NCBI GenBank assembly: GCA_020891255.1
Contig: BQFW01000008.1
Span: forward strand, 2,914,001 to 2,978,000
Length of the DNA stretch: 64,000 nucleotides
From: Entomortierella parvispora E1425
Taxonomy: Eukaryota; Fungi; Mortierellomycota
Direction: 5' to 3'
Shown piece by piece: positions 21,531 through 46,220 of the stretch; position 1 is the first letter of the stretch, and every line of letters starts with the position of its first letter. The position numbers were made by a program, and so were the translations under genes. The notes under the pieces were generated by a model. The model saw only the letters and a list, made by a program, of their open reading frames with translations. It ran no database searches and was not told the origin of the DNA.

Positions 21531-21630
21531 GAGTGCCTGACAGCTATTTCTTCTTCTCTGAACAGAGTTCATGTCGTGTCTTGACAAGGCTTAGTTTACT
21601 TTGATGTAAATTACTGTGGATGTAAATCCT

Positions 21631-21770: not shown

Positions 21771-21779
21771 ATCCAAAAC

Positions 21780-21918: not shown

Positions 21919-23586
21919 CTTCAGGGAATTCAGTGCTGATAGTTGAAGCCCCTCCCCTGATATTCATGACTTGTTACATTACTCCCACCGAGAAATATGG
22001 ATTGGACTTCATGATTTTTATTTCCAAAAAAAAAACCCCCCTGTAGCGTGCTGGCGCCCTGAGAACTATAGATGTCCAAATGGCTGTAATTCTTCATAGC
22101 CAGTCGCATGCCCAGCGTCAGGAGGCGCGTGAGGAAGACTAACCCTAGCATAGCGTGATCTTGTCTTCGATCAACACAATCCTGGATCTCACACGGCTGG
22201 GAGGGGTTGAAGTCTAGTTAAGAAAGTGCCACGCCGCTACCACGCCCACTTTAACACATTTTGTCTTGTCCACTTACTGAGCGTGCTTGGTGCATCCTCC
22301 CATTCATCATTCAGGACTTACACCCCTCATCCTCGCCATAGACGCTCTGGAGAGGGTGAATCACTACCAGTGACAAGCACACCCAAGTGCGCTTGAGAAT
22401 GGCATAGCCCAAGACCCCATCATCCCGTTAGCGGCTCCGGAGGTTTTTGGGACGACGGGGTGCTGCCCCATAATCTCATAGTCTCCTTGATACGAACACT
22501 GATCTGGTAAACTGTGGAGGCTGTCGCACTCGAAGGGAGAGCATCCATCCCTGAACAACTGGGAGCTTTCAGGGCTCTTTGTGGGGCCTTGTTTGATACT
22601 CCTGGATAATCGACAGAACTTCCTAAGGGTAGCCTGGCGACCGTTCTCGAAAATATATCATAACTGGTCGCCAAGAATCCTATGAGCTGATCCTTGAGTC
22701 CTTGCATGACAAACTTTCCTGTCTCTCGTGCTCTTCTTTACCTTGGCTTTACCTTCGATTAAGACACCAATGATAAATTGTCGAAACTTTGCTGTGATTA
22801 AAGTCCAGTATGCTGCTGGTTGCGTCCTTTGTATGTTCCTATTATTGACCATGGTGGTAAAAGAGTCAGATTAACTTGTTGCTCGTGATATGTTTGAACA
22901 GGAGACAGATGGGATTTGAAAGAACATACTTGGTAATCCATCCTCAAGATACTGGATGAGCAACAGTTCTTTATACTTGAATCGTTCCGTAATGAAGTTT
23001 CAAAAAAACGGGCAAACGAAGAGACTATGGCCATCAAAGGTATGGCACATCGCGACGGCGCCTTCCTCAGGCATCTTTCCTCGCCCGTGCTCTCTATCGA
23101 TGTAGCCAGGGCTAACCTGATAAATATGATGCCCTGAATCTAAACGCCTTTCTTGATCAATACCTGCCCAGACAAGAGTGTTGTCCTATTGCAGCTCAAG
23201 TGCTGATGTTGATGCCTTCGATGATGCTCACTGCTTCGCCCAGGGCCGACACAAGATTCATGGCCTGTCATCTGTCATTCAAATCCATATGGCGGTTGCA
23301 TTGCTCACAAAGGCCAGAGCGATCCTTATCCTGCATCCGCTGTAGTTCATGTTGTGCCCGTTGACATTGAAGCATCCTTGTCGTTGGTCCTTGGGACGAA
23401 GGATCAGATTACTCCTCCAAAAACATGCAGTGGAGCCAAGGCTGTACGCGTGTAAAACAGTCACAAATGCTGTCACGTTATGGGCTGAAAGCTATAAAAG
23501 CAACGCCCGCCGCAGTTTTTTTTCCCTCACCTCTTGACTCTCTCGCAATGTGTTATAAACCTCGGCTGGTCACCACGCCTGTCCTC

Positions 23587-23691
23587 GACTTTCCGCAGCG
23601 TATATCCTCATTGGTAGAGGTGATTCTGTGGAGAGTTCCGAAGCTATGCGATTTCGCTGTATTTCGGATAAATGCACACTGCAAAAGGGTC
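23587..23691 (+). ncRNA. Candidate Pol III structured small RNA, copy 1 (105 nt)
   Basis: TATAAA at 23554. Body GACTTTCCGCAG...CTGCAAAAGGGTC closes a terminal helix. Internal hairpins CCTC-ATTGGTA-GAGG, ATTCT-GTGG-AGAGT and TCCGAAG...TTTCGGA. T8 tract at 23694-23701. Confidence 0.6.
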
Positions 23692-24046
23692 AATTTTTTT
23701 TATTCACTTTCAAAGCAAAATGGGCAGGTTGGTGAAGGAGAGCGTGCTGCAAGGACGTGAGGACGACAATCCGCGCACGCATTGTCGAGCAGCTGTGAGA
23801 AGGCCGGGGAATGGGGAGGATGGTGTGCGTGCAGCATGTCACAATTGGTTTGAGCGTGGCTGTCTAATGGAGACGAGCAGTATTTGGGCTGAGCCCATAG
23901 GTAAGCCATGGCTCCACGTATAAAACAGTCACGAATGCTGTCCGCTATGAATAAAAAGAACTCCCTGCCGCAGTTTTTTTCTTTCTTCACCTCTTGACTC
24001 TCGCGCAGTGTGTTATAAACCTCGGCTGGTCGCCATGCCTGTCCTC

Positions 24047-24151
24047 GACTTTCCGCAGCGTATATCCTCATTGGTAGAGGTGATTCTGTGGAGAGTTCCG
24101 AAGCTATGCGATTTCGCTGTATTTCGGATAAATGCACACTGCAAAAGGGTC
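24047..24151 (+). ncRNA. Candidate Pol III structured small RNA, copy 2 (105 nt, identical to copy 1)
   Basis: TATAAA at 24014. 105/105 identical to copy 1 while the flanks differ. T6-A-T5 tract from 24154. Copy spacing 460 bp. Confidence 0.6.
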
Positions 24152-25010
24152 AGTTTTTTATTTTTCATTTCAAAGCAAAAATGGGGGATAGCAATGGGTG
24201 GTGAGCTCAATAAAGCAGTGCGCAACCAGAGAGGGTCAACAAGTTGCACATGCACATCTTCATGCCAGTGAAGGGTGGGCATGTCATGGCCATTTCGAAA
24301 GAAACCATGGACGCGTGGAATTTCACACGTGACATTCCCATTTTTGGTGGCGCCTTTCATGAGTGACCTCCCCCTCTTCCCCTTGACTACAACAAGGATC
24401 AGGAGAAGGCAGAATTCAGGGGGACAATACACGGAGGCCCTTATGGGTAGACAGCTGACAGTCCATGCTCAATATGCTCGGTTGGCCGTCAAACTCGTTT
24501 TCGGTCGTGGTTCATGTAACAAACTTTCCACGGACGGCACCAACTCTTGATCCAAGAGATGACAACACTCCGATTAGAGCTACACCTCATCTAGCAGCAG
24601 TCAGTGTGGTTCGGCTGTTTCGATTTTGGGATGTCTGCATGAAGGAAAAATACAATTGACCCTGCAGGCACCTGCCTGCATGCATACTCGTCCGTGGCCC
24701 AGTGGACAAAGACCAGCAGTATCTCCTGTTTTATCAGTTCAGTTTGAGTTCATTGGCGATTTGGCTCATGCTCACAACTCATGAACTCAATGGACTCAAT
24801 GGTGTCAAGTATCAACGCAATGTGATTACCCGTTTGCTTCAACACATCCCTCTGTTACTTCAACTTCTGAGGCTTCGCCTTTACGTACAATCCGAACAAC
24901 CATGCTATCTACGGCAGCTAGTAAACAGAGAACAATTCGATAGGTTCAAGGAATTCAATCAATGAGTGTCTTTGAACGAGACGCCGATCATGTTGCGAAG
25001 TTCCATACTC

Positions 25011-25044
<34 letters not shown>

Positions 25045-27497
25045 ATCGGATGGTGAACATTGAACCAAGGAACTGAGCAACTTGCCCTAGAAATGCTTTT
25101 TTTAACCCCTCGGTTCATCGCCACCATTGATTGTGCACTGCTTCTTGAGTAACAAGTCGACATTCGAGGTCAACTGATTGCCGAAAATCGACCTTTTACC
25201 TTTTTTCTATATTTCGGAATCAGGGGCAGTCTCTTTATTTATGTCAAGGATGCCACAGATACATATTCAACACTCTGACAGCTTACCATGCTCAGATTTC
25301 TCACAGAAAAAGGAGCAAAAAAACCCGAACCTACAGGATCTGGGTGCAGACAGCGCTTGGTCAAGCACCACCAATTCTCCGGGATACAGTTCTTCACACA
25401 TTCGGATGCGCCTTTCTTCTACCCCAAGTGATAATAGCTCCTCCTTTTTGTACAATGAGATATCCTCGAAAGAATCTTCATAGCATTGGACGATGGATAT
25501 ACGAGAGAGTCGAGCGTCTTTAAGTCGACATAGGCGGAAGGATCGAGACTGGAAGACTTTGGCCAAACTGTCTGAAAACCCATGCATTGTCATCCAAAAA
25601 TAAAAAATATGAAAGCCAATATGAAAGCTTTCATCACAACTTTGTCACCTCGCACTAGGTCTTTCACCCTGCCACTTTTCTTTATAGCAACTTTAACTAG
25701 ATCTCTGTGAAACAACAGTGGGGAGTGCACAGTTAAAATAACCAAGAGCAGACCAGGCAAGCAAGGGGGAAGAACTCAAACCTCCAGTATTTCGAGATCA
25801 GTTGAAGGATTCCCTCCCAGCTGTTGCCACAAAAGAGGGAAGCATCCCAGGCTGCTTTGTCGTTGACGATGATAGACGAGGAGGTGGATCCCAAGAAGGT
25901 GGGACTAGCGACACGATTCCTCAAGAGTCCCATCCATGCAGAGCCGGCCTCACTATGCGAGCGCTGGAACCGAAGCATGCAGGTGCAGGATCCAGAGGTG
26001 GCTGAAAAATAAGTCTTGAAGGTATCCAGGGACCCGGATACCTCCAGAGCGTCAAGACCAAGGTTGGCCTCTGATTTAGAGTACATCGCCACGACATAGT
26101 AAAGAGAGATGAGCATGGCAGAGATCTAATTGCAGATAAAGTACCATGGAGAGCGATAAAGTTGATTGTCAGTGGATGTTGTGGCAATTGAGACTTGTAG
26201 GAAGGGTCTTGGTGTTGAAAAAAAAGTTACCAAGACAGATCGGGTCAGTCTCCTTGATGAGAGTAGTTGGAGTAGGGTCCAAACTCCAGCTGCGTGGACA
26301 ATTGCAAAGAGAGCCATGGGGCTTGTCTGCATCTCGGGGCTAGCGAACATCCTATGTTCGATCGTGACGCTGACGCTGACGGGGTAAGTGAGGAGTGGAG
26401 AGTCGGTATGAGAGCCTGAGGAAGAGTAGAGAACAAGAGCTCAGAAAATGCGCTGAATGCTAGAAGCAATGAGGGAAACTGACAGGCGATTCGTGGGTGT
26501 TGAGAGAGAAGAATGACACGGAATGCATTATTGGCGAGAATGTTCATACTCCATTGCCTTCCATTACTCTGTTCCATGTGATTGAAGGCCAGCGGGCGAA
26601 GATACGCCACCAATTTTTTTTGGTTTTTTTGGTGTTTTTCTCTTCGCGTGCAGGACGTGATTTCTTTCTTTTACATATTTTCAGCATCTGTCTCTCAACG
26701 GCCATCCGTTTACTCTTCTACTGTAATGCTAGCATCATGAACCAAGGTTGTAGACTTGCGGTGTGAGGAGGGGCAGTGAAGGACGGCCAGCGAAAGAACG
26801 CCAAAAAATACCTCTAGAAATAGATAGATGATTTGAGCCCGTGCCTTGTTTCTATTTTCTCTCCGCCACCTCGGACCTGAAGTCCAAAAACAAGGAGAAA
26901 GGCGCCACACGCGCGCCCGAGAAAAAAAAAGTCAAGGATTCAATCTCACGGTGGCAACTGACAGATCTGTCTGTCGTTTTAGCTTTGAAGATGTAAAAGG
27001 GACGGGGGCATGCCTTCTTTTATGGTGGCTTTCATAATCCCAACAGCCTTTGTAAAGGAAAAGGAGTCAAGGCATACCGACTCTAGTCACAGAGCGCGAT
27101 TGAATGCAACAAGCAGGCGAAATAGCCAATGGGACCCAGGACCCAGGATTTTTGGGCTTGGGAGCTCAATTGCTGATCGAAGTTCTTTTACATTTTTTTG
27201 TTTTTGTTTGCAAGGGTTGTCTGACAAAGACGGTACCTGCGGCGTAAGTTAAAAATACCCATGAGGCAAAAAGCTCGTGGGTGATACAGATGGACTAAAG
27301 GGACCTCGATCGTATACACACCGAACCTTACCTTAGCGCTCGTGTCCCTCTTCTGTACTGTACATTTTCTTGCCTTTAAAAACCCTGGGAGTTTTCTGCT
27401 CTGTTCCTCACCTTTTCTTTGTTTTTGATCCTGTGTCGCCTTTCCTAATACCTTCCTCCATCCTCATCTCCTGATCCAACAAGAAAAGTACCCCAAG

Positions 27498-28770
27498 ATG
27501 CCACCTCACAGTGTCCACTCTCTCAACGCCGCCACTGCCAATGGCAGGACTCCATCCTTATTTGCTTATACTGATTTTGACAGCACCGTGACTCTCAAGG
27601 ACTCAGGCAACACTTTGATGGCAGCGATCATGGGCGAGGAGGAGCTGATACGCCTTGACTGCCTTCCGGAGACGGACCCTAAGAATGTCTCCTTACGAAA
27701 GGCCGAGGATATGAAATGGGATCGAGTGACTCTGTCAATTCAGGATGCCGCCGATCTCTTGGTCAATGGATCCGTCTCAGTTTCCTCAGGACCCGAAAAG
27801 TTGAAAACATTAAATGTGGACAAGGTTGTGATGGATCCAGCCTTTGCGGCTTTTCACTCGTTTTGTAGAGAGAATTGTATTCCTTTGATCGTGGTCACCA
27901 TGTAAGTCTTTCCACCTTTCTCACCCCCTTCTCTCTTTGTCTCTCCTTTGAAGATGCAAACGAGTCAACTGCTCGCTTCCTACATTGTTTTTTTTTATCT
28001 GTTCTTTCACTGACTCCAAAGTTTTTGTCTTGTTCTCTTTTTGTAGAGGCATCCAACCGTTGATAGAGGCCATGCTGGACAGATATCTCGGCCAGGACCA
28101 TGGCATCCTCGTCCGAGGCAACGGACTCGAGTTTCGTGCAGATGGATCCTGGAAGATCCTCTGGCGCGACAGCAGGTATTTTTTTTTTTTTTTTTTTTTT
28201 TTTCAAACTCAACGAATTTCCCCACGCGTTTTTTGTTGCGCCTCTCTTTCCATTCCGTCGACTCTGCGGATCTTCTTCATCTTCTGTCATCATGCATCAA
28301 CGCCCTGTGCCACCAATCCAAAAAAAAATCCTAACTTGTTTTCACCCTCTCTCCTCTCCCCCTTGCTTTTGTCCCCACCCCTTTTAAAAATCCCAACCTA
28401 AAAACGCAACCGACAAAAAAAAAAAAATCCTAACAGCCCATTCGGTCTCGAAAAGGGCCGAGCCTTGCGAGAAGCACGAGAGCATGATCTACGGGACTCC
28501 AGCACAGACCAGATCTTGTGGTGTGGCGACGGCAGCTCGGATTTCCCTGCCGCACTAGAGTCAAATCTGGTCCTGGCCCGAGAACAAACATCTTTGGAAC
28601 GTCTCTGCCGTGCCAACAACATCGCCCACACGGCCTTCAAGACCTTTGACACTGTACAAGAGACGGCCAAGGCGTGGCTTCAGAATCACCCAGGCGCACA
28701 GACGTCCGAGGAGGTGAAAACATTCTACAAGTCCTGGCAACTCAAAGTCTCTAATCCTCAGGAGCCATGA
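27498..28770 (+). CDS. HAD-superfamily phosphatase (MtnX/PHOSPHO-like, subfamily IB); join(27498..27901, 28047..28175, 28437..28770), 288 aa
   Basis: Motif I variant TDFDSTVT, VMDPAF..F..FC, GLEKG and motif IV CGDGSSDFPAA. GT-AG junctions keep the frame. Confidence 0.88.
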
Positions 28771-29172
28771 TAATAAAGACTTTTACTCTGTACAACATTT
28801 CCACTGCTACACTCAATCGTAAGCACTGAATTGGGGACCCTGCCTGATTTTCAAAAATGGTGGGTGGATCGATTCTTTATTTCCAGTCTTCGCCTTGATA
28901 TAAACGAGAACAGTAAAGAAAACAGGAGGATGATGTACAAGGTCGGAGCATTGAGGGGGTTATTTTGGTCGTAGTTTCAAGAGTAGTGGCGAATGGCTGT
29001 TTCGACCATGCTGAGTAAACTGGGCGAAGCAAAAAAAGGGAGAAGGAATAAAAGACCGGGCCGTAGGAGAGTTTGTTGAAGAGAAAAAAAAAATAAAAAA
29101 GTCCTGGTCGGAAGAGGATCAAAAAAGCACTGAACGATCCAAATTCATTCAAACTGTCCAAAAAGTATCGAC

Positions 29173-30606
29173 TTAGTAGTGGTAGTAGTCCTTGCTAAAG
29201 CTGGGGTCCTGAATAAATGCAGCCAAGACCTTGCTTCCAGTCTGCAACAGAGGGTGTCCAGCAACACTATTGGGTTCAGAAAGGACAAAAGATAAAGAAA
29301 TTCCGAAGATGTGAGCATCCATGCTGTATTTCGTCATTTTTTCAGCCACGCCGCGGGACAGAAGGTGTGCGGGAGGCGGTGTAACAACTGATTTTTCAGA
29401 CACAGAAAACCAACAATGACAAGCCATAAACTTGAAGCGAGGGTGGGTAGGAAAGTAGAGCAGTGTGACTTACATCTGCAAGAAACGCTCCAATCCTTCG
29501 CGACGCTGCTCAATGACCTCGTCCGTGAAGCGGTTGGTGAAGACCTTTCCTGGAAGAGGAGGGATGTTGACTCTGGAAGACTCTCTCTCCAATACATCAC
29601 GGAACCACTCAAAGTCCGAGTAGCGACGACGAACAGTGGATGACTTTAACTTGAAGGCAGGGATATTGGTCTAGATTCAGGTTTCAAGGTTTCAGGGACA
29701 GAGAGTCAGCATCGAAGGATCACCCATAGGCTTCTATATGAGGAAAGGGAGATTCCATCGCTCCTTGTTGCTGTGTTGCCGTTCCTGGGAGAGCGAGATA
29801 AGAACAGAGAAGCACGGCCTTCCCGCGTGACGGATAGACCAGTCGGCGTGTTTCCATGTCCTTGCACAAAGATGCCTGGGCGTCGTGTCCAGTCATGCGG
29901 GATACGGACAAGGTAAAACAGAGGCGAGCCAAGAGGCAGACAACAGCAAGAGAGAGCACTTACTCGGCAGACGATCTCGTAGTCAGTAAACATCTTGCGA
30001 GCGACACCTATCCGATAAAAGTAATGACCATAACAAAGAAAACGTAAAAAAAAAGAGAGACAAAAAAAAAAAAGGAGGCCAGGGGAGAGATGGGCGAGAC
30101 CCAATATCGTCAGCAACAGTGAAAAAAACACAGGAGAGGAGGGTGGGTGACCTAAAATCCCTCGGACCACACGAGACGATCCTGCGTACTGCAGATATCC
30201 TGTCCAGACGGGTGAGGTCCTTGTCCATGACTAGTCTCCTTGGGTCCATGAGCAGGCAGATTACAAAGGGGCTGCCAAGACACGAGTTGTCGGGACGAGG
30301 GCGGGGAGAAGAGATGCGATGGACTCACCATGGTTCTGGGGATTCCTGACTTCAATCTCCAAAAAGTTTTCTGGCTCGCCATAGATATCGTCGAGGGTCT
30401 GGGGTTTGGATTGACTAGAGGTTGTTGAGAACAGAGACAAGAAGAAGGAAAAAGAAGGGTTGAGTCAAGAACGTCTAGCAGAGGAGCCAGCTGCAGAAGC
30501 GGGGCTCGCTTGAGAGTTGAACGCAGAGCGAGAGAGAGACAGCAGGCACTTACAGGCGAGAGTGCTCGTCAAAGGCACGGTGTTGTACAGAGTTGGGCGA
30601 GTTCAT
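29173..30606 (-). CDS. SNX3: Sorting nexin-3 (PX domain); join(30606..30554, 30414..30329, 30007..29964, 29670..29474, 29266..29173), 157 aa
   Basis: Spliced translation: [20 protein letters not shown]|[14 protein letters not shown]|[66 protein letters not shown]|[14 protein letters not shown]. The ORF track does not show this gene as one unit. Confidence 0.95.
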
Positions 30607-30861
30607 GGCGGAAGTGAGGAGAGGAGTAAAAGTCGACGAAAGGAGGGGATAGAGAAGAAAAGGAGAGAAGAAGAGACAGAGAATGAGACTGAGGAGGGAA
30701 TGGAACGAATGAAAAATGGACACGAGAAAGAGAGATGGATGGGAAGAAGATGCACGTGACTTGATCACGAATCCACTGTGGGGCAGAGAAGAACAAACAA
30801 AGTCTCTTCTCTTTCATTCAACTTCCCCCCCAAGCAAACCAAGCAAACCAAGACATCAGCC

Positions 30862-31552: not shown

Positions 31553-31798
31553 GAGTAACAAGAAACTGTCTATGCGATGATGACCCAGTTTTTTTTGTTT
31601 ACTTCAAAGTATGTACATACCATTAGCATCATGGGTGCTCTCAATCTTGGACTCGACTCGGAAGAGATCGCTTGGCTCGAGAGTAACCCCCAAAGACTTT
31701 ATAGAGACCCCTTTACTCATATGAAGCATTAAATTATGACAAAAAGCAATTGGACTGGTGCTGTGGGGTTATAGCATGGCTGGATATTTATTGGAATC

Positions 31799-36268: not shown

Positions 36269-38416
36269 ATGAAAGTGCTGTGGTACAATGGCGGCATGGT
36301 GGTGGATCCTAGATGACCGGTGGTTGTGAAAGAAATACGTTGGGTCGATATCTGAAAATAAATATTAGGCCCGTCGGGTCTAGTTCATCCATTGCATCTT
36401 GTCGCTCGGTCTCTGAATTCTTAGCCCAGCCATTACCACGAAAAACATGCATGGAATCAATATCATAGGATGGCCTTCTGAGTCGACTTTGCTCGATATA
36501 TTAGATGGGAGATACCATGCAGATGTTTGATTGACGAATCCATGGTCCTCTAACTATTGGATATACATAATAGATATGGATCAATAAATCTTTCTTCCTG
36601 TTATTCCACAATCTTTATCCACCACCTACCTTGACCTCCAGCAGCACCGGGCGGATCGTAATAGACTTGCAAAGCTGCCAGTTAGGTCGAATCTCCCAAC
36701 TGATTGGGGGTAGTAGATCGCCTCTTGTTCTAAACACGTTGAGAGCATGTGTACCTTCCAGCCATGTACAAGGATCCCAATTACTATGGACTCAGCGTAT
36801 CCCTGCTGTAATTGGAGAGACCTATCTTCATCATATTGAGAAGCATGATATGACCCGTGTCATCTTCCGGTGATACTGCGAGCTAAGGTTCCTTTAGCAA
36901 AAATCTATGAGGTTGCTGTTGCACATTTGTTTTGCCCTAGAAATCCGACGTTGTGGATCCATCGGATATCAAAAAATTTCTTCTCCAGAGAAAGCTGGAA
37001 GTTGGAGGATCTACTTTTCTGCTGACCCTGATGCCTTTCATTGCAAAGGAAATAAGATGGCCTACCTTTTTTTTTCTAGTTGTCCTCGATTTCAGGTTTC
37101 CTGTTATGTTGTTTCCATGCATGGTCGACTGCACTGGATCTACGGTTTCAGTGGAAAGTCGCTTGCCCCTGCCATCTATTTCGCAGTGGAATAGCCATGG
37201 ATGTAATTGGGGAGTTGCCATCATCGTCCTATGAGAGCTCGAGCTCGTAGTTGCAGCTTAGGCTGACAAGCGGCCACGTCCACGCCTATATTTGAAGACT
37301 AAAGGTTTGAAAGCTGTCAATTGAAGATGCCTCCATCGAAACGCTGGTTTTTACTGCTGTTTGGGTGAAGGTCACAACTGCAGTCGCCCGATGGAAGTGG
37401 CGCAAGTTGTCTGAGCATCCTATATGAGCCGATCAGACGACAGGGGTCTCTAACTGATCAATCCCGACGTAGCCAAGCGTACCAATAACCTATTTCAGTG
37501 CAAGATGTGTTGCCTGTAATCCTCTCAAGCATCTTCTGTATTCGTTATAGTTGTCATCAGCCCTGCTGTCGCACTGGCTTCTAAGATAGAGGGAAGATAC
37601 ACAATATCGCAGAGGTGATCAGGGATCCGATTTTTTTTTAGTGGATTGCCTTCGCCGAGTTTGCATGCATATCCTCAAAACTTACAACAGCTCTGGTGAT
37701 GTTTTTGCGCGTTTGACCCCTCGTGGTAGTGGCTGTATTGCATGTAACCATGGTGGCCGATCCTTTTTTGCTTCTTTTCTTGGTAAGGAGGGTTTTTGCC
37801 TCCCACACAAACACGACCCTGTGGAAATGAAAGTCGCCTAACCCCTTTTGGACATAGTGGTGGCGCTGATGGATGGCGCCTCTTGATGAATCGGCGGATG
37901 GATGAACAATGAACAGACCGTTGCAGATGACCCTGGATCTGTTAGATGGGGCTGTGTTTGCGGATGACAGACAGTGCGTTCGTCATTCCTTCTTCCTTCC
38001 ATCCACTCCGAACGACAGAAGAAACGAGAGAAAGATACAGTCCGTCCGCCCTCGACCCCCCGTGGTGTCACTGCGCCGCTATCCTGTCCCTGACTGACTG
38101 ACTGAGACTGACGGACGGACGATGGACGGAGGACGTCGAACTCTATCTTTCTTTTGCTTCGCGTTGGCTCCATTGCCTCCATTCATTCGTTCCTCTTTTT
38201 CTTTTCATTCATTCATCCCCCTTGCATCCGCCCTTCCACCCTTCTTTCTCTGCAGGCAGCACTCTCCCAGCCTTCTCTCCTCTCTGGCTTAGGCACAGCT
38301 TCGAATCTTTGATCTTCCCGATTCGGTCTAGACCCGCACCAATGCCCCCATCCCCTTGCAGTTGTGGCATCCGAAAGCATTCGCACCATCACCCACTCGT
38401 TCCAAGCGCTTCTTTC

Positions 38417-40794
38417 ATGCGGAGGAGGTTTTTTCCCTCACTTCTGCCCTCCCTACTCTATCCTAAGAATAAGCACAGTCCATACTTGGGGACCCTCCTG
38501 GCTCTCTTTCTCTCTCTTGCCCCAGGACTTGTCCTTTCCCAAAACGCCTCTCTTTACAGCCCTCGGTATAGTTCTGGATCCGCTGTTGCAAACAACACTC
38601 TGTATCTTGTAGGTGGGACTATAAGTGCCGTCTGGCCCTACCAGGCTACAGGAGAGGTCCTCTCTGTCTCTCTTGAAGCCGCCTTTACTGCAGATGCTAT
38701 TCCCTGGAGAAAAAGGACTGGCACCGCAATTCCGGTCGCGGATGCGAGCGTTGCTGTCACCAAAGACCAAAGCCATCTGGTCCTTGTCGGCACAAACAGT
38801 TCCACCCTTCCATTCGCAATAGCGTACGACATCTCTCTTGACGAATGGATACTGACATCCGCAGGTACTCCGAACCCACCGCTCGGCCCTAGAGTCTCTG
38901 TCGGAATTGTCACAGATACCAACACTGGATTGCTTGCAATGTACGGCGGCCTTGATTCAAATTCAAAGTTGTCAGCCGAACTTGACCTCCTCAACCCAGC
39001 CCCAAACCCCGTAAATCCATTGCAGTGGACTTGGTCGTCCCCAACAATAGAGGCTTTGACACCCCAGCTGTTCCATCCAATGATGTTTTATCTGCCCGGC
39101 AATCAATCCGTGTTGATTCTTGGAGGCTGCGATGGATATGTCCAAAATCTTACCAGTTGTGGGCCATTATCAAAGGGATACCTCATCGAGACAATCCTTC
39201 AAGGCTCTGTTATCTCCTCAGGAACGCCAACCACTGTGAATCCCACGTCAAAAGGAGGAGCGATGCCGGTGGCCCGGCTCTTGCCCTGCAACACTTTGCT
39301 CCCAAATGGGGATATTCTTGTATATGGAGGCGTCGCCATCGACTCCTTGGCAAGTTTGAGTGACACTTGGCTCCTGAGCACAACAACCTGGACATGGACA
39401 CAGATTAATTTAAAAAATGCTCCGACCCAAGGACGTGCTGGAGGAACCTGTCAGTTGGTCGCCCCAAATGTGGTCATGGTTGTTGGAGGTAAGGCGGGCT
39501 AGCTTTTATTTGCCTAAATCCTGAATATGTGCCATCGACAGCTATCAAGAGAGAGAGACAGGTCAGGGGTAAGTCACTAGAGTCATTGACAAACACATTT
39601 GTTTCCCACGTCCTAGGGTACGATGGAGGTATCACGACCATGAAACAATTTACCGGCATTCAGATTGGCTTTATCAACACCAACACTTGGGGCTGGTCAA
39701 ACTCTTTCGATCCTCATCCACAACTCAGTGCAGGATTAAGTACTGGAGTCATCGTAGGGATATCGGCAGGCGCAACGGTGGTCATTGGCTTGATTCTTTT
39801 TCTAGGAGGGCTATTCTACTGGCGCGGAAGAAAGAGACAGCTATTCGATAAACCAAGTCGAAGCCATAACCCTCGCCATGATTCTCAATCCAACTTTCCT
39901 CTTATTCCCTCACCTTTCGAGGACGGCGGTCGGGACACTCCAGATCGGTTGAATTCTCCCTCTTCGCCGCCGAGTTTGAACTCTGGTTTTCTGAACAGCA
40001 AATCCAATCGATCATTACCTCTCATTATTATACCATTATCCACTCCATCATCTTCGACAGACAGGATTCCATTGGCACCAACACCTCAACGAGCATTCAG
40101 AGCAAGTCGACTCGCTGTCAAACAAGAAGCGGAACTTCCAGAGAGTGACCGACTGCCTCAAAATGAGGCCGACATTCAGTATGGGCACTATGTCCGGACG
40201 TTGCAACACAGCAAACAGTACGAGAAGCGACAACAAAGTCCTCTTCAACGAAATCCAACGGAATCATCAAGGCACACGACTTTTCATCACGAGGATGACC
40301 AGGGCCTTCATTATGAGCCCGACATGGCGACGGGGGTCATCAACTTGCGGGATATTGAGTTTGGCGAAGAGTTCTCAACGCCATCTCGCCCCACCTACCG
40401 ACGACAGGACTATGGGGCATCTAATATACCCGGAAATGCATCTCAGATCCATTCAATAGAGAGCTCACCCAACCATCGACGCATTCCATTCAAGGGAGAC
40501 AAGGCTGAATATGAAGAGGAAGAAGAAAATGATTATGACTATGTCCCAGGAGTTGGAGGGCCTATCACTGCACTGAAGGCGGCCAAGGAGGCAAGAGCTG
40601 CGGCTGTAGCTGCAAAAGCTGTTGGATCTGGACAACGATCATCCTTTCATAGACCTCCACTCCCCTTGGGGGTGAAGGCTGTTGGGGCACACAAAACTGA
40701 GACGAAGCACGGATACTCTGCAGTCTCAAGCACTCCCATCTTCTTGACAGAGAGCGAGGTGGTTGTGGACAATCGCAGAGTTCGTCGAGTCTGA
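38417..40794 (+). CDS. Kelch/galactose-oxidase-like beta-propeller single-pass membrane protein; join(38417..39488, 39617..40794), 749 aa
   Basis: Signal-peptide-like N-terminus. Kelch-type GG motifs (LYLVGG, AMYGG, LILGG, LVYGG, MVVGG). TM helix GVIVGISAGATVVIGLILFLGGLFYW then RGRKR and a low-complexity tail. Confidence 0.85.
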
Positions 40795-40964
40795 AAAAAA
40801 TGTACCATAATAAAAATACCCGCCTAATCTATTCCACCTTTTTTAAATTTTAAACAAAAAAAATCATAAGGCGTGGCTTGCCGCCCTGACCCATTCAAAG
40901 ACCTGATCAGCTTTTTTTTTCTTTCTTTTCCTCACACACACGACAACCCACACATACATACACC

Positions 40965-42774
40965 ATGTCGTTAGCCGACGACTTTTTGGCAGATCTCGAC
41001 TACGAGGACGCAGAGGCGATCGTCAGCACAGGCTCCGATGCTCTAGCAGGGTCGTCCTCCTCCTCCCAGAAGGGGGCGTCCTCCAATGGCATGGACATTG
41101 ACTATGGCGATTTCGATGACGAGGATGGCGAGAATGACGAAGCAGACGAGGACCTAGAGATGCCAAATGGCGACAATGATGCGGCGCTGCAATCTATGCT
41201 TCGGGATGTCCAAAAGGCCAAGAATGCACGCGACATTGCCAAACTGATGGACTCGAGCGAGATGAAAGGGATCTTGTCCGACATTGCTCATTTCCAATCC
41301 GAGGCCGAAGCCAAGGGCACCGATGTCACAGGAATGGTCGAGGACGATCCAGAGTATCAGCTGATTGTTAAGGCCAATACGATTACTGTCGCTATCGATA
41401 ACGAGATCTTGGTCGTTCATAAGGTATGGAGAAGCCTCCCCTTTGTGCCCTTGCGAGTTATGGCGCAGCGGTTTACTAATATTGTTTTGCTTTTTTGTTT
41501 TTTGTTCTCTCCTCTATACCAACTCTCTCTTTGTCATAGTTCATCAGAGATCATTATGAGCCAAAGTTCCCGGAACTGGAAACGCTGGTGGCAAACCCCA
41601 TGGACTATGCCAGGACAGTAAAGAGGATTGCGAATCAGGAAGACATCACCAAAGTAGAACTGCACGACATTTTGCCTTCGGCCACCGTCATGGTCGTGGT
41701 CGTGACAGGAACTACAACTGAGGGACGTGCCCTGACAGAGGCCGAATGGAAGTCTTGTGAGGAGGCCTGTAATCTCGCCTTTGAACTTGAGAAGGCCAAG
41801 GGAACGGTATGTTCAAACCGCCATGCTACTTTTTCAGGACCCAAAAAAAAAAAAAAAAAAGCCCTATTTCTGACCTTTTTTTTCCCCCTCCTTTTTTGAT
41901 GCCATAGATTATTGAATATGTGGAATCCAGGTTGACTTTTATTGCACCTAATCTTTCAGCCATCATTGGAACAGCAACAGCAGCAAAGTTGATGGGACAG
42001 GCAGGAGGATTGACAGGATTGAGCAAGATGCCCGCCTGTAACGTCCAGGTCTTGGGCAAGGAGAAATCTCTTAACCGAGCTCTCTCTGCCGCCACCAACG
42101 TCAGGAACGCCGGCTATATTTACTACTCGAATTTTGTCCTTAACCTGCCCTCTGAGGTCCGTATGAAGGCCCAAAAGATGATTGCCGCCAAACTCACGTT
42201 GGCCGCTCGCATCGACAGGACTCATTCTTTCCCAGATGGATCCTGGGGTCGCAAGACAAAAGAGGACCTGGAAAAGAAGATTGACAAGTTGTTGGAACCT
42301 CCACCCCAGAAAAACATCAAGGCCTTGCCTGCTCCCCTGGAAGCCGCGAAGAAGAAGCGTGGAGGACGGAGAGCTCGTAAGGAAAAGGAACTGTATGCCC
42401 AATCAGAGATGCAGAAGCTGAAGAACAGAGTCGAGTTTGGAAAGGAGGAGCAAGAAGTCATGGGCTATGGTACGACAGAGGGATTGGGTATGTTGGGACA
42501 GAACTCTTCTGGACCAGGAGCAGGCAGGATCAGGGCAGCGCAGGAGAACAACAGGAACAAGGGCAAGGTCTCCAACAGGACAGCAGCTCGTTTGGCACAA
42601 TATGGTCAAAGCTCTGGAACAGCCACGGCGGCACTGGCAGGTACCTCTTCTATTGCTTTCACGCCTGTACAGGGTATCGAGCTAGTGGACCCCACGGCTC
42701 AAGCGGCTAAGGTCAAGGCGGCAAACGAGAGGTATTTCGGAAGCGGTGGGTTCTTGAGCGCAAAGAAAAAATGA
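40965..42774 (+). CDS. PRP31: U4/U6 snRNP protein Prp31; join(40965..41423, 41540..41806, 41908..42774), 530 aa
   Basis: IDNEILVVHK|FIRDHYEPKFPELETLV, YVESRLTFIAPNLSAIIG, GLSKMPACNVQVLG, AAKLTLAARID and KKKRGGRRARKEKE. Confidence 0.96.
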
Positions 42775-43599
42775 GCGCGACCGAGCATGTATATTTCAAA
42801 TCAAAAATAAATGTGGAACTGTATCATTATCGTGCGCTCTGGACATATCGCAGTGCTGCTCTCTACCGACCGTCAATGAGGTGGCTGGGTTACCCATGGT
42901 CTTTTGCTGTACAGCGAGCTGGGTCTTTATCCCGTTCAAGCCCATATGCCTTCGACGATGGCCCTCAAAATATCAAGTGCGTCTTGGCAGAATCGTATGC
43001 AGAATCAACTAAAGCCCGCCTGTGTCTACACACAAGCGTGTCCTCACATACATATATGAAAATCCAATGCTACGCAGCTGGCAGCACTTTTAAAACAAGT
43101 TCTCCGACATACATACATTTCCAAAAAAAAAAAAAAAAAAATGGTAAGGTTGACCGTGGACCACCAGCGCTCTTCAACTTTACAAAAACATGACATTTCC
43201 GCCATGAGGACTCAACATGTCATGTTTTCAGTCAGGGAAACTCTCAGATTCCTCTCTACTCTCATTTTATTGTTTCTATGTCTGAACATCGATGAATCTC
43301 GGGTCACCTCCAACGACCTTCACTCTGGTAGTTGTGTCCTTCATTGATGGATGTCAGGCACAAAAGAGTTGGCTACATGCTTTTAGACATCTGAGCGAAG
43401 GCGCTGTGAGTTATTTGATTAGCGGCTCCGATTTCAGGATCTGACATTCGTCTTCTTGGTGATGGTGATGAGTCGACTTTGAAAGGTTGGCTTTCGTACC
43501 CTTCCTGAGCTTGTAGATTCGTGAGTTCATTCAGCTTGCTCTTGGATCGATCAGGAGTTGGGCTGAAGCTCGGCCTGAATCGGGCCATGCTGGTGCGCT

Positions 43600-44600
43600 A
43601 CGCTACAAGTTTAAGATAGCTCGACGATGCAAGGCATCACTCCGCTTGGTCGTCTCTCCGCTGGCTACATCAAAGCCCAGAATGCAGTGCAGACAGCAGA
43701 GCGTCTGCGTCAGCCACTTTCAGTCGTCGCAACTCAACTGCTGTCTGGCGTGCCTCGCATTGAGGATTTTCATCAGCTTCAATGCGCCGTGACTTCGGAC
43801 ACCGGGGCTCTCTCGGAAGAGCAACAAAGAGGCATCTTGGCCGAAGCGGTCGCAGAATGCACTCACATTCAGAACACGCTGAGAGTCTCCTAATGATGAG
43901 TCGGCGTCTTCCCTCTTTGTCCTCCTCGTTCTTGTCGTCCGTCTCGACCGAGATCGCCCACTCCCTAAGTTTCGAGCAAGCCCATGGCTCCGAGGATCGC
44001 ACGACACTTGAGGAGAGGAAAGGGATATCTACAGTGATCGACAGAAGGTGTTTACAAGAGCACAGTACGCGTCTTGACCTTGTGACTTTCGAGGCCATCG
44101 CAGTCTTCAAACCCTGTCTTGGTTAGGTTAGAAGCGCAGTTCTTCAGGATTGCTTCCTTCCTCTTCTCACTCTGGGCCACCTGGGTCAGCATCAGTTTCG
44201 GAATGCCTTGTGTGAGGGCATTAAAAGTCTTGACAAGGGCATCTTCCACAGCCATGGCGACAGAGTGTCCAGTTGGTTCAAGTCATTTCACCATTTCACG
44301 GGAGACCTTGATAAATAATCTCTCTGATCGGCTCGAAGGTTCCATGCATCCGTTCCTTTTCCTGAATCATGGCCCCAGGACAGACTCGAAGGGCTATTGA
44401 AATCTTCAAGAGGATGCACATTGTTTGCAAAGACTCCGAATCAAGGTGGTAGGCCTGCAGTTAAGTCTGCTTCGACGTGTTATAGCCGTCTTCTTGAATC
44501 GTTGTCATCAGATCCACAGAGTGGACTTGAAGATCGCTATTTGAAGAGAGGGGAATAGTCAATTATATTAGATCGAAGGCAGAAGCGTTGGTTGATACAG
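43600..44600 (-). pseudogene. Decayed paralog of the F-box/LRR-like gene at 48839-50386
   Basis: Fragments LLKISIALRV..MIQEK..MHGTFEPI, VKTFNALTQGIPKLMLTQV, DCDGLES, CSCKHLLSITVDIPFLSSSVVRSSEPWACSKLREWAISVE match 49550-50100. Several stops and frameshifts. Shares the CACCAGCATGRCCCGA motif found after the stop of the intact gene. Confidence 0.8.
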
Positions 44601-44835
44601 TAGACGGCAAACATGTACCTCTGAGAAGAGTGAGCTGATGAGACGGCGTGGAGATGCTGGGCTTGGCTGAACACCACTGTGGGGCGGCAAGGACAGGATG
44701 TCAAAGGCCGAGTATCTGACAGCCACCGCAGAGTTTCCCTTCTTCACGTCGTGGTTTAAGGCTTGTGACTCACTCCTGGTTCTTGTTACTATATCAACCT
44801 GCGACCCCTTTCGATTACTGCTGAGGTAAGTTCTG

Positions 44836-45010
44836 GTGCTTATGGGCGGCCGTCATCTCGAGACGGATTCGATCCTGGCTGCACATGAATTCTATAGAGG
44901 TCTAATGGTGAATGAAGAGGAAGAGAAAAAAAGACAATGTGTTCGGGAGCGAGAGCAAAAACTCAAAAAATGTCACGTGGCGCAGCGACGCGCCTTTTGG
45001 GGCAATGTGC
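44836..45010 (+). repeat. Dispersed non-coding module X, copy B
   Basis: GGTGCTTATGGGCGGCCGTCATCTCGAGACGGATTCG...GAGGAAGAGAA...ATGTGTTC...AAAAAATGTCACGTGG...GACGCG matches 21631-21770. Confidence 0.75.
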
Positions 45011-45541
45011 CTATTGCTCTGGACCCACACCGCTTTCCAACGCACAGGCCCTAAACGAATGTTAATGATTGTTTTGCAAATGAGTGCGAAAGATCAAGGT
45101 GGGTGAAAAGTGAGTGAAAGAGGTGGAAAAGATGAAAGGCGAAAGTGATGGAGGTAAGGCTGCTCACGCGTGTTCGTGGCAAGAGCGGAGGATCAAATGC
45201 GGTGCCCCTTTCGCGCTGTGCCTGCCTTTCTTAGTCGTCCTTTCTTTCTCCTTCCTGCCTGGACTGTCCATTGCTTGGACTCCCCGCCAAGGCATGTGCA
45301 ATTCTGTTGCCGGTTGTTTTTGATTGAGCTCAATTCACCATTTCCTCTCCCATTTTTTTCTTGAGATGAAAACTGACCCTTTCGCAGTGCACACATATTC
45401 AACCCTCCCAGAACGTGGACAGTCACTTGTGACTGCCAATCTATCCAGAAGTATAAAAGTAACGCAGCCCACCCCTTGTTTCCTCACCTTTTGACTCCTC
45501 TGCAGTGCGCTATAAAACGGGCTGGTCGCCATGCCAGTAGT

Positions 45542-45668
45542 GACTTTCCACAGAGTGCATCCTCATTGGTGAGGTGGATTTTGTGGAGAGTGTCATAATG
45601 GACGTTCATTTAGGGCCTAATCCGCCTGTTCGTTGTAACCTTGGATAAGTGTGCGCTGCGGAAGAGTC
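45542..45668 (+). ncRNA. Candidate Pol III structured small RNA, diverged copy 3 (127 nt)
   Basis: TATAAA at 45511. GACTTTCCACAG...CTGCGGAAGAGTC terminal helix. Conserved CCTCATTGGT(A)GAGG and ATTYTGTGGAGAGT. Longer third arm. T10 tract at 45672-45681, then the shared TTCAAAGCAAAATGGG. Confidence 0.58.
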
Positions 45669-46220
45669 AACTTTTTTTTTTATAAATTTACTTTCAAAGC
45701 AAAATGGGAGGTGGTGATGAGAAGACGCTACAAGGATGTCAGAGAGCAACATGTTTCACATGCACTGTGACAGGTTGATGCTTTGGAAAAGGTGTGTGGA
45801 ATTCGTACTTGATGGCAACCTCCATCGAGATTATAATAGCGCGTCGACAACACGTGATTCATCATTTCGCCTCGTCCTTTGTTTTCCCGCCTCGTCCTTT
45901 GTTTTCCCTCTTCCTCCCTCACCAGACAACATCCAAGATCAGACCGGGATCACAGCCCAGGATCGCGGTCCACAAACACCAGGATTTGCGGCAACAAGAA
46001 CCAGGAGCGAGTCGAGCCATAACATGACAGGGTGGAAGAAACTCAGGATGTGGCTGTCAAACGCTTTCAGCATCGCACCGCCTCTTCTTGAAATTTTGTG
46101 TCCGCCTTCCTTCTTTCTTTTGCATTATACAAAGTCTCTGTCTCCTCCGCTCAACACTGACAGTCCCACCCTCTTCCAACAGCCTCTCCCTTCTTCCACC
46201 TTTCATTTACGTACGTTCAG

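What the first reader, a model, noticed from the sequence alone, without database searches (positions are those of the whole stretch)
23554..45681. Candidate new family of Pol III-type structured small RNAs (three copies)
Seen: copies at 23587-23691, 24047-24151 and 45542-45668 each start GACTTTCC 31-33 nt after a TATAAA and end in GTC directly before an oligo-T run (T8, T6AT5, T10). The 5' and 3' ends pair. Copy 3 changes both strands yet keeps the helix (T-G to T-A; two C.A mismatches become C-G). Inside are CCTC-ATTGGT(A)-GAGG, whose loop resembles a tRNA D-loop/A-box, ATTYT-GTGG-AGAGT (the C/T change keeps pairing through G.U), and a third arm that differs in sequence and is about 22 nt longer in copy 3 but still folds. 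Overall this is a cloverleaf-like four-way junction on a long stem. Copies 1 and 2 are 105/105 identical while their flanks differ. Established: TATA near -30 plus an oligo-T terminator is the Pol III layout. Inference: a functional ncRNA; I could not match it by eye to tRNA, 5S, SRP, U snRNAs, Y or vault RNA.
Basis: partly seen in the sequence, partly recalled or inferred. Interest (0 to 1): 0.85.

Follow-up and report, generated by a model that had tools for sequence, protein, structure and literature searches.

The report
Orphan small RNA gene family, fungus
A soil fungus (Entomortierella-type) carries at least four copies of a roughly 105-130-base gene built like an RNA polymerase III small-RNA gene that matches no described RNA family. 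It is probably a young, lineage-specific structured RNA, but its expression and its function are unproven.

Summary
Three copies (23587-23692, 24047-24152, 45542-45669) each start GACTTTCC 31-33 nt after TATAAA and end GTCA before a T6-T10 run.

Copies 1 and 2 are identical over exactly -10 to +106, while their flanks are 67-80% identical. Source-genome contigs show a fourth copy elsewhere, and a decayed inverted fragment lies at 45344-45414.

There is no Rfam hit and no tRNA call. No homologue turned up in metagenome contigs or in the few Mortierellaceae loci I could fetch, and no RNA-seq run was listed. Copy 3 sits in a 12-kb segment that a close relative lacks.

The proposed cloverleaf on a long terminal stem is not the favoured fold. 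A 50-nt 5' hairpin is 3-5 kcal/mol better and pairs in every copy. The 5'/3' terminal pairing is real but weaker, and no pair shows a change on both sides.

Function is unknown. I read it as a lineage-specific Pol III structured RNA of the snaR / 4.5S / Y / vault type. The scan has noted other orphan Pol III-like RNA families on other pieces of this genome. Interest is moderate.

The parts
23587..23692 (+). Copy 1, predicted RNA body (106 nt, GACUUUCC...GGGUCA). Nt 2-50 form the 5' hairpin, nt 51-82 the middle hairpin, nt 87-97 a small 3' hairpin.
   Evidence: model R1, 130.9 bits
23694..23701 (+). Copy 1 T8 run, predicted Pol III terminator
   Evidence: No significant structure spans it.
23527..23540 (+). 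Copy 1 conserved upstream block TCACCTCTTGACTC at -60 to -47. It shares only the TCACC core with the vertebrate PSE.
23554..23559 (+). Copy 1 TATAAA at -33
23564..23579 (+). Copy 1 conserved block GGCTGGTCACCACGCC between the TATA box and the start; role unknown
23457..23464 (+). Copy 1 distal conserved block ACAGTCAC (about -130)
23706..23724 (+). Copy 1 conserved downstream box ACTTTCAAAGCAAAATGGG, lying after the T run
24047..24152 (+). Copy 2, predicted RNA body, 106/106 identical to copy 1
23987..24039 (+). Copy 2 promoter region: TCACC block 23987-24000, TATAAA 24014-24019, GGCTGGTC block 24024-24039
24154..24184 (+). Copy 2 T6AT5 run (24154-24165) and downstream box (24168-24184)
45542..45669 (+). 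Copy 3, predicted RNA body (128 nt). The 5' hairpin is 85% identical to copy 1, the middle arm is about 22 nt longer and unalignable, and the 3' tail is 71% identical.
   Evidence: 85.2 bits
45419..45535 (+). Copy 3 promoter region: ACAGTCAC 45419-45426, TATAAAA 45452-45458, TCACCTTTTGACTC 45484-45497, TATAAA 45511-45516, GGCTGGTCGCCATGCC 45520-45535
45672..45708 (+). Copy 3 T10 run (45672-45681) and downstream box TTTCAAAGCAAAATGGG (45692-45708)
45344..45414 (-). Decayed inverted fragment of the family. It keeps the 3' part of the RNA (…GTGTGCACTGCGAAAGGGTCAG), a broken T run and a remnant of the downstream box; the 5' hairpin is missing.
   Evidence: (E 0.009)

Best explanation
These are independent genes of a lineage-specific small structured RNA, most likely transcribed by RNA polymerase III.

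**Inferred transcription.** A conserved upstream promoter drives it: blocks at about -130, -95 and -60 to -47, TATAAA at -33/-31, and a block at -23 to -8. A tRNA D-arm-like (A-box-like) element at +17 to +34 may help. Transcription would start at the G of GACUUUCC and stop in the T6-T10 run. The product would be a 105-130-nt RNA with a 3' oligo-U tail, which in other eukaryotes is bound by La.

**Fold (computed).** A 50-nt 5' hairpin has an 11-14-bp lower stem, an internal loop and an apical CCUC/GAGG stem capped by the invariant AUUGGU loop. A middle hairpin follows that is free to change in sequence and length. The RNA ends in a short, weak 3' hairpin and tail.

**Alternative pairing.** The 3' tail can pair with the 5' strand instead, so a closed 5'/3' form is possible as a minor state.

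**Function (inferred).** By analogy with other young, clustered Pol III RNAs (snaR, 4.5S_I/4.5S_H, Y, vault), I expect a protein-binding scaffold or decoy RNA. The 5' hairpin would be the functional module and the middle arm a spacer.
For: - **Gene layout** is repeated in all copies.
- **Selective identity.** The block of perfect identity between the tandem copies coincides with the predicted transcript (-10 to +106). Flanks are 80% and 67% identical.
- **Graded conservation, copy 1 versus copy 3.** The 5' hairpin is 85% identical, against about 70% for the flanks and 3' tail and 46% for the middle arm. The TCACC block, TATA, GGCTGGTC block and downstream box are nearly invariant.
- **Stable fold.** The 5' hairpin is more stable than shuffles (z -3.5 and -5.5; whole RNA z -3.2 and -2.5). 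RNAalifold recovers it, and 100% of cells pair in its lower stem.
- **Fourth copy.** Source-genome contigs show a fourth copy with seven differences (C7U, C8U, G9A, A16C, U17C, +G after nt 35, C79U). All keep or add pairs in the hairpin model.
- **Structure ends at the T run**.
- **No conserved reading frame** lies inside or after the unit, and overlapping ORFs have no Pfam hit (sequence reading).
- **DNA-level duplication.** Upstream homology beyond the transcript, a tandem pair and an inverted fragment argue for DNA duplication, not retroposition.
- **No known family** matches.
Against: - **No expression evidence.** No RNA-seq run could be listed, so polymerase, ends and stability are all inferred.
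- **No homologue outside this genome.** The searches were narrow: one exact-motif scan of metagenome contigs (9 chance hits) and four loci next to PRP31 in other Mortierellaceae.
- **Copy 3 may be young.** It lies in a 12-kb segment absent from a close relative, so the family may be dispensable.
- **No two-sided compensatory change** is seen; only two distinct sequences lie in the window.
- **Copies 1 and 2** could owe their identity to a recent gene-conversion tract rather than to selection.
- **Copy 4 looks weaker.** It has a T5 run at +4 to +8, lacks the 3' half of the downstream box, and its RNA is no better conserved than its promoter. It may be a pseudogene, which weakens the argument from its 'compatible' changes.
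- **The box after the terminator** is not explained by a simple Pol III model.
Confidence: 0.55

Rival explanations
1. It is a Pol II snRNA-type gene. The upstream TCACC block acts as a PSE-like element. The conserved downstream box acts as a 3'-box end-processing signal. The U run belongs to the RNA or to a protein-binding site and is not a terminator.
For: - The downstream box CTTTCAAAGCAAA matches the vertebrate 3'-box consensus GTTYN0-3AARRYAGA (PMC5493778) at 10 of 12 positions in copies 1-3 and 9 of 12 in copy 4.
- It lies 6-10 nt after the T run, so a 3' end 9-19 nt upstream would fall at the end of the conserved body.
- The TCACC core sits at -60.
- Unverified scan notes report snRNA-machinery homologues and an Sm-type orphan family with a 'shared end signal' in this genome.
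Against: - 4.4% of random 43-nt windows of this DNA match the 3'-box consensus equally well.
- The PSE match is only the TCACC core.
- There is no Sm site: the U run is followed by A, not G, and no terminal hairpin follows it.
- TATA at -30 plus a T run of six or more directly at the end of the conserved body in all four copies is the Pol III signature.
Confidence: 0.12
2. It is not a functional RNA gene. It is a recently duplicated, decaying DNA segment, for example a promoter/leader module derived from a mobile element such as the LTR-plus-oligo-T elements that other scan notes report in this genome. The hairpin would be incidental.
For: - The family looks young and lineage-specific.
- It lies in dynamic, gene-poor regions next to expanded F-box-like genes.
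- There is a truncated inverted fragment and a copy with an early T5 run.
- Similarity between loci extends well beyond the transcript.
- The body ends in CA directly before an oligo-T, as scan notes describe for LTR ends in this genome (unverified).
Against: - Only about four copies at 80% likeness or better appear in the source assembly contigs, with single-copy depth each.
- There is no gag/pol or other Pfam signal nearby.
- Both members of the tandem pair are followed by the same 'leader', which a 5'/3' LTR pair would not show.
- Flanks of copies 1 and 2 have diverged 20-33% while the 116-nt block has zero changes.
- The fragment that lost its T run and 5' half has visibly decayed, whereas the intact copies have not.
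Confidence: 0.2
3. It is a highly divergent member of a known family (Y RNA, vault RNA, 7SK, U4atac or another minor-spliceosome snRNA, or a tRNA-like RNA) that the standard models miss.
For: - It shares general features with Y and vault RNAs: external promoter with TATA, length of 100-130 nt, clustered paralogues, a variable central domain, 5'/3' complementarity and a U tail.
- It has a D-arm / A-box-like element, as in vault RNA.
- A scan note says U6atac of this genome also scores below Rfam thresholds (unverified).
Against: - No Rfam family reaches even E = 10 apart from chance hits (mir-186, snoR24, SNORA41).
- There is no Ro-binding GGUCCGA/bulged-C helix, no B box conserved between copies, no k-turn, no Sm site and no 7SK GAUC motifs (sequence reading).
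- ARAGORN finds nothing consistent even at lowered thresholds.
Confidence: 0.08
4. It is the structured 5' leader of small protein-coding (Pol II) genes whose start codon is the ATG in the conserved CAAAATGGG after the T run.
For: CAAAATGG is a good fungal start context, and it is conserved in copies 1-3 and in the inverted fragment. Scan notes report TATA-driven micro-protein genes elsewhere in this genome.
Against: - The frames after the ATG are 68, 7 and 24 codons long and share no protein beyond about 12 residues; further on they go out of frame.
- Copy 4 has no ATG there.
- There are no Pfam or homologue hits.
- Copy 2's promoter region begins only about 200 nt after copy 1's T run.
Confidence: 0.05

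Closest known systems
Lineage-specific Pol III small RNAs: primate snaR, rodent 4.5S_I / 4.5S_H, BC1/BC200 (from my own knowledge)
   Same: About 100-120 nt. Few to many clustered or tandem gene copies confined to a narrow lineage. Dominated by a long imperfect hairpin. Oligo-U end. In 4.5S_I, conserved 5' flanks are needed for transcription.
   Different: Those RNAs derive recognisably from SINE/Alu/tRNA sequences and use internal A and B boxes. Here no source element is recognisable, only an A-box-like D-arm mimic is present, and the promoter seems mainly external.
Y RNAs (Rfam RF00019) and vault RNAs (RF00006)
   Same: External promoter with TATA, 85-140 nt, clustered paralogues that differ mostly in a central domain, complementary 5' and 3' ends, U tail. 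Vault RNA also carries an A box close to the 5' end.
   Different: There is no Rfam match and no Ro60-binding bulged helix. No B box is conserved. The strongest partner of the 5' strand is an internal segment (nt 40-50), not the 3' end.
Vertebrate type 3 Pol III genes (U6, 7SK, H1, MRP): PSE at about -55 plus TATA at about -25/-30 (PMC5493778)
   Same: A conserved element at -60 to -47 beginning TCACC, TATA at -33/-31, G start, T-run terminator.
   Different: Only the TCACC core of the PSE consensus TCACCNTNA(G/C)NNNAA(A/T)(G/A)N is matched. There are extra conserved blocks at -23 to -8 and after the terminator. SNAPc dependence is untested.
S. cerevisiae SNR6 (U6) gene architecture (from my own knowledge)
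   Same: TATA at -30, an intragenic A box, a T-run terminator and a promoter element located downstream of the terminator.
   Different: The downstream box here (cTTTCAAAGCa) fits the B-box consensus GGTTCGANNCC only partly, and copy 4 keeps only ACTTTCA. The RNA is not U6.
7SK snRNA linear/closed conformational switch (from my own knowledge)
   Same: The 5' strand can either extend a 5' hairpin or pair with a segment near the 3' end. Pol III type, U tail.
   Different: 7SK is about 330 nt with GAUC motifs, and it needs HEXIM, LARP7 and MePCE. HEXIM is reported as essentially holozoan (PMC11482795). None of the motifs is present here.

Membership tests
tRNA / tRNA-like (including tRNA-Sec) | Cloverleaf with acceptor, D, anticodon and T arms, recognised by a tRNA finder | tested here: not met
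   ARAGORN finds 0 genes in the window and 0 with introns allowed. It gives only inconsistent calls at thresholds lowered to 70-80%. The D-arm-like CCUC-AUUGGUA-GAGG is present, but no T arm is conserved.
Any Rfam 15 family | Covariance-model score at or above the gathering threshold | tested here: not met
   0 matches at gathering thresholds in 64 kb. At E up to 10 only chance hits appear: mir-186 at 28 bits against 70 needed, snoR24, SNORA41, STnc370, sR20.
Y RNA | Terminal stem of the 5' and 3' ends carrying the conserved Ro60-binding helix with a bulged C | tested here: not met
   The terminal pairing exists but is the weaker alternative. The GGUCCGA/bulged-C motif is absent from the RNA body. 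GGCTGGTC occurs only upstream of the predicted start.
Y RNA | Ro60 (TROVE) protein encoded in the genome | not testable with these tools
   Only this window and a few foreign loci were readable.
Vault RNA | Internal A and B boxes plus a 5'/3' panhandle; MVP in the genome | tested here: inconclusive
   An A-box-like element lies at +17 to +28. A B-box-like GAGTTCCGAAGC occurs in copies 1, 2 and 4 only, carries an extra C and is absent from copy 3. There is no Rfam Vault hit. MVP presence could not be tested.
Spliceosomal snRNAs (U4atac, U6atac, U11, U12, U4, U5, U6) | Sm or LSm site, k-turn (U4/U4atac) or ACAGAGA/AGC boxes (U6/U6atac); Rfam model match | tested here: not met
   There are no Rfam hits. 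There is no RAU4-6GR Sm site and no AAUGA k-turn on the + strand, and the AGC-containing stretch is not conserved in copy 3.
Pol III gene with external (type 3-like) promoter | TATA at about -25/-30, an upstream proximal element, a purine start and a run of T as terminator | tested here: met
   TATAAA at -33/-33/-31, a conserved TCACC block at -60 to -47, a G start, and T8 / T6AT5 / T10 in the three window copies. Copy 4 also has a T run at this place, whose exact letters were not shown. This is sequence layout only; polymerase usage is not tested.
Pol III gene with external (type 3-like) promoter | Pol III occupancy or dependence, and a transcript with a U tail | not testable with these tools
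   No RNA run was listed. Only DNA contigs of the source sample were available.
SINE / retroposed Pol III element | Many dispersed copies whose homology starts at the transcript's 5' end; target-site duplications; A- or T-rich tails | tested here: not met
   There are about four copies at 80% likeness or better, each at single-copy depth. Homology extends 130 nt or more upstream of the start in every copy. The arrangements are tandem and inverted DNA duplications.
Pol II snRNA-type gene | 3' box 9-19 nt after the mature end; PSE without a Pol III-type TATA; Sm site | tested here: inconclusive
   The 3'-box consensus is matched 10/12, but 4.4% of background windows match as well. TATA is present and no Sm site is found.

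The most novel reading that the evidence does not exclude
The RNA is a two-state regulatory Pol III RNA. Its 5' strand toggles between the 5' hairpin and a closed 5'/3' form, with both partners kept in every copy. That would make it a compact fungal analogue of the 7SK linear/closed switch, or a Y/vault-like RNP core. The host fungus, according to unverified scan notes, keeps metazoan-type Pol II pausing and snRNA machinery (NELF subunits, ICE1, a LARP7-like protein).
Probability: 0.04. Interest if true: 0.9.

Novelty: new variant of a known kind. Interest (0 to 1): 0.45.

Why it matters
Small Pol III RNAs outside tRNA, 5S, U6, SRP and RNase P/MRP are almost unknown in fungi. Early-diverging fungi such as Mortierellaceae seem to keep animal-like RNA machinery.

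A verified orphan family would have three uses:
- It would add a fungal example of a lineage-specific structured Pol III RNA.
- It would define promoter and terminator rules for this group, which helps guide-RNA expression.
- It would give a handle on what the conserved 5' hairpin with its tRNA D-arm mimic binds.

If the family instead proves unexpressed, it is a useful warning. Gene-like TATA-plus-oligo-T units can arise by segmental duplication.

Tried and rejected
- **Rfam.** I ran gathering thresholds on the whole window and E up to 10 on both loci. Nothing credible came back.
- **tRNA finders.** ARAGORN at default settings, with introns, at lowered thresholds and in mitochondrial mode gave nothing consistent.
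- **Synteny.** I fetched PRP31 orthologue loci in Lobosporangium, Mortierella sp. GBAus27b, Podila and a Logan relative, plus four contigs of a close relative. None holds a family member. The close relative lacks the whole 12-kb segment that carries copy 3.
- **P450 neighbour of copies 1 and 2.** Its best homologues are 59% identical or less, so there is no usable orthologue.
- **Collection scans.** An exact-motif scan of metagenome contigs gave 9 chance hits. A viral-contig scan gave 6 chance hits.
- **Overlapping ORF as a protein query.** I used it to fish for spurious ORF calls over homologous RNA genes; there were no hits.
- **Sequencing runs.** No RNA run was listed, and only the source sample's DNA contigs were available.
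- **A fourth TCACC-block match at 60945** has no TATA or gene-like unit after it and looks like chance.
- **Coding readings.** Frames after the conserved ATG, and the small frames inside the RNA, are not conserved between copies.
- **Hairpin framing the T run (LTR U5-leader style).** No significant structure was found.
- **B-box reading of the downstream box.** The match is only partial, and copy 4 keeps just ACTTTCA.
- **Complementarity of the apical CCUCAUUGG to the U4 5' stem-loop CCAAUGAGG, and the nearby PRP31 gene.** This rests on a sequence recalled from memory and was noticed after the fact. I kept it only as a lead.
- **Literature.** I searched for Mortierella snRNA/U6 promoters, vault, Ro60 and 7SK in fungi. 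Nothing bears on this RNA.

Full report
**What is there**

Each begins GACTTTCC, 33, 33 and 31 nt after the first T of a TATAAA. Each ends GGGTCA or GAGTCA, followed after one or two bases by T8, T6AT5 or T10. A 29-nt degenerate pattern of the 5' part finds only these three sites, with 0 expected by chance.

**Extent of the repeated unit**

Copies 1 and 2 form a tandem pair with a 460-nt period. Their similarity runs over 23434-23724 and 23904-24185 at 87.5% overall. That identity is very uneven:
- -153 to -11: 80%
- -10 to +106: 116/116 identical
- the next 68 nt: 67%

At the flank rate of about 12% substitutions, an unchanged 116-nt block has a probability near 1e-7 (my estimate). The block's edges coincide with the predicted start and terminator. 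Selection or gene conversion could each produce this, but either way the transcribed block is treated differently from its surroundings.

Copy 3 is a much older paralogue. Against copy 1:
- the 5' hairpin is 85% identical
- the 3' tail is 71% identical
- the middle arm cannot be aligned and is about 22 nt longer
- the flanks are about 70% identical

**Conserved blocks outside the RNA**

| Block | Position relative to the start |
|---|---|
| ACAGTCAC | about -130 |
| TATAAAA(G) | about -94 |
| TCACCTYTTGACTC | -60 to -47 |
| TATAAA | -33 / -31 |
| GGCTGGTCRCCAYGCC | -23 to -8 |
| ACTTTCAAAGCAAAATGGG | 6-10 nt after the T run |

The last of these is 17/17 identical between copies 1 and 3.

- The -60 block shares only the TCACC core with the vertebrate PSE consensus TCACCNTNA(G/C)NNNAA(A/T)(G/A)N (PMC5493778). 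I therefore call it PSE-like by position only.
- The downstream box matches the vertebrate snRNA 3'-box consensus GTTYN0-3AARRYAGA at 10 of 12 positions. However, 4.4% of random 43-nt windows of this DNA match equally well, so this is a lead and not evidence.

**More copies**

I laid the source sample's DNA contigs on copy 1 at 80% likeness. Besides copies 1 and 2, this shows one further copy elsewhere in the genome (copy 4), assembled from a 183-nt contig and an 8175-nt contig at single-copy depth.
- Its RNA differs from copy 1 by C7U, C8U, G9A, A16C, U17C, an extra G after nt 35, and C79U.
- Its promoter has 7 substitutions and a 4-T insertion, but keeps the TCACC block, TATA and GGCTGGTC block.
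- After its T run only ACTTTCA of the downstream box remains.
- It has a T5 run at +4 to +8, which could stop Pol III early, so it may be a dying copy.

A covariance model built from the three copies also picks up a decayed inverted fragment at 45344-45414 on the minus strand. It keeps the 3' part of the RNA, a broken T run and a box remnant.

Total copy number is therefore low, about four plus one fragment. The copies arose by DNA duplication (tandem, inverted, and with upstream homology), not by retroposition. A second pair of conserved non-coding blocks (21560-21800 and 44770-45040) shows that loci 1/2 and 3 descend from a larger segmental duplication.

**What it is not**

- *A known RNA family.* No Rfam 15 family reaches its threshold in the 64-kb window. 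With permissive filters only chance hits appear.
- *A tRNA.* ARAGORN finds no tRNA even with introns, and at lowered thresholds it gives only mutually inconsistent calls.
- *A spliceosomal, Y or 7SK RNA.* There is no Sm site, k-turn, Ro-binding helix or 7SK motif, and no B box is conserved between copies.
- *A coding unit.* Frames inside the RNA and after the conserved ATG of the downstream box differ in length and sequence between copies (68, 7 and 24 codons; none in copy 4). Overlapping ORFs have no Pfam or homologue hits.

**Fold**

The minimum-energy structures of copies 1, 3 and 4 all have the same 5' hairpin, nt 2-50.
- The lower stem is ACUUUCCRCAG paired with CUGUGGAGAGU.
- An internal loop follows. 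It is closed in copies 3 and 4 by U17C plus the inserted G.
- The apical stem is CCUC/GAGG, capped by the invariant AUUGGU loop. This apex resembles a tRNA D arm minus one base, and hence a Pol III A box.

After the hairpin come a middle hairpin and a 4-bp 3' hairpin. The 5' hairpin is far more stable than shuffled sequence (z -3.5 and -5.5), and RNAalifold recovers it.

Enforcing the terminal stem costs +5.1, +3.7 and +3.3 kcal/mol in copies 1, 4 and 3. Its ensemble probability is 0.0003-0.27 depending on the pair.

Both complementarities still exceed chance:

| Copy | Internal strand (p) | 3' tail (p) |
|---|---|---|
| 1 | 0.0008 | 0.046 |
| 4 | 0.0008 | 0.013 |
| 3 | 0.0018 | 0.003 |

(All.)

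Counting pairs gives this picture:
- The lower stem of the hairpin is paired in 100% of cells, with two one-sided wobble changes.
- The terminal stem is paired in 87.5% of cells. It has two C-A mismatches in copy 1 that are C-G in copy 3, and one G-C that becomes A-C.

If copy 4's tail is like copy 1's, as the contigs indicate, its C7U and C8U would make U-A pairs there. Positions 7 and 8 would then read C-A, U-A and C-G across the three lineages. This is suggestive for a closed form. Against that, U17C with the extra G is suggestive for the long hairpin.

With two or three distinct sequences, one of them possibly a pseudogene, neither helix is proven by covariation. My reading is that the 5' hairpin is the default fold and a closed form is a possible minor or induced state. 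No significant structure spans the T run, which fits an RNA that ends there.

**Phylogenetic reach**

I could not find the family outside this genome, but the searches were narrow.
- One exact-motif scan of JGI metagenome contigs gave 9 chance hits. One scan of viral contigs gave 6 chance hits.
- PRP31 lies 2.8 kb upstream of copy 3. Loci around its orthologues in three other genera and one Logan relative hold no member.
- A metagenome contig of a close relative (PRP31 80% identical in DNA) runs from PRP31 straight into a WD40 gene. That gene matches window 54974-56204, so the 12 kb that carry copy 3 are missing there.
- The P450 gene next to copies 1 and 2 has no close orthologue.
- No RNA-seq run could be listed. 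Only the source sample's DNA contigs hold the sequence.

The family therefore looks young and lineage-specific, and expression is untested.

**Interpretation**

The most economical reading is a small family of independent genes for a structured RNA of 105-130 nt made by Pol III from a mainly external promoter.
- *Shown:* the gene-like layout, the selective conservation, the stable hairpin, and the absence of coding capacity or a known family.
- *Inferred:* the polymerase, the transcript ends, La binding of the U tail, and any function.

By analogy with other young clustered Pol III RNAs (snaR, 4.5S_I/4.5S_H, Y, vault), I expect a protein-binding scaffold or decoy. The conserved 5' hairpin with its D-arm-like apex would be the working part and the middle arm a spacer.

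Rivals:
- a Pol II snRNA-type gene with a 3' box (0.12)
- a non-functional or mobile-element-derived duplicated module (0.20)
- a very divergent member of a known family (0.08)
- a leader of small coding genes (0.05)

**Context from the scan (unverified notes)**

The genome is named Entomortierella parvispora in those notes. Other readers reported further orphan Pol III-like and Sm-type RNA families, a divergent U6atac, and NELF, ICE1 and LARP7-like proteins on other pieces. One unfollowed note (s1-199029) describes a cluster of three Pol III-like small RNA genes with vault/tRNA-like architecture. It may or may not be the same family, and I could not see its sequence. These notes only supplied leads: the organism name, the LTR-plus-oligo-T rival, and the 7SK-like speculative case.

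**Verdict**

The specific cloverleaf model is not favoured. Expression, polymerase, conservation beyond this genome and function are all open. Interest is moderate at 0.45.

Noticed in passing
window 21560-21800 and 44770-45040 (+): A second pair of conserved non-coding blocks (74% identity; invariant CAAAAAATGTCACGTGG holding a CACGTG E-box). They lie 1.9 kb upstream of RNA loci 1/2 and 0.6 kb upstream of locus 3, so both loci derive from a larger segmental duplication.
   Followed up: partly
window 42800-55000; L014 2053-3618: In a close relative's metagenome contig, PRP31 is followed after about 330 nt by a WD40 gene that matches window 54974-56204. The 12 kb between them in the window, which hold copy 3 and F-box-like genes, are absent there.
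   Followed up: partly
window 55252-56695: The WD40 region gives many offset matches at a period of roughly 125 nt. The WD40 repeats are therefore unusually alike at the DNA level, as in the hypervariable repeat arrays of fungal NLR-type genes.
   Followed up: no
window 40796-42772 (+): The PRP31 gene (Nop and Prp31_C domains), a U4/U6 snRNP protein, lies 2.8 kb upstream of copy 3. The RNA's invariant apical CCUCAUUGG is complementary to the U4 5' stem-loop CCAAUGAGG as I recall it. This is a lead noticed after the fact, and it is not tested.
   Followed up: no
window 46221-46394, 48818-50383, 61386-61567: F-box-like paralogues surround copy 3: a Pfam F-box-like hit at 48818-50383, and 71% DNA similarity between 46221-46394 and 61386-61567.
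   Followed up: no
window 60945-60958: A fourth near-match to the TCACC block (ACACCTCTTGACTC) has no TATA box or gene-like unit after it. It is probably chance.
   Followed up: yes
L002 3968-4878 (Mortierella sp. GBAus27b): A tandem repeat of about 290 nt shows up as recurring GATTTCC / GACTTTCA motifs. It is unrelated to the RNA family.
   Followed up: no
window 18372-20357 (+): An intron-less 662-aa cytochrome P450 whose best homologues in other Mortierellaceae are only 52-59% identical. It is a divergent paralogue in a gene-poor stretch.
   Followed up: partly
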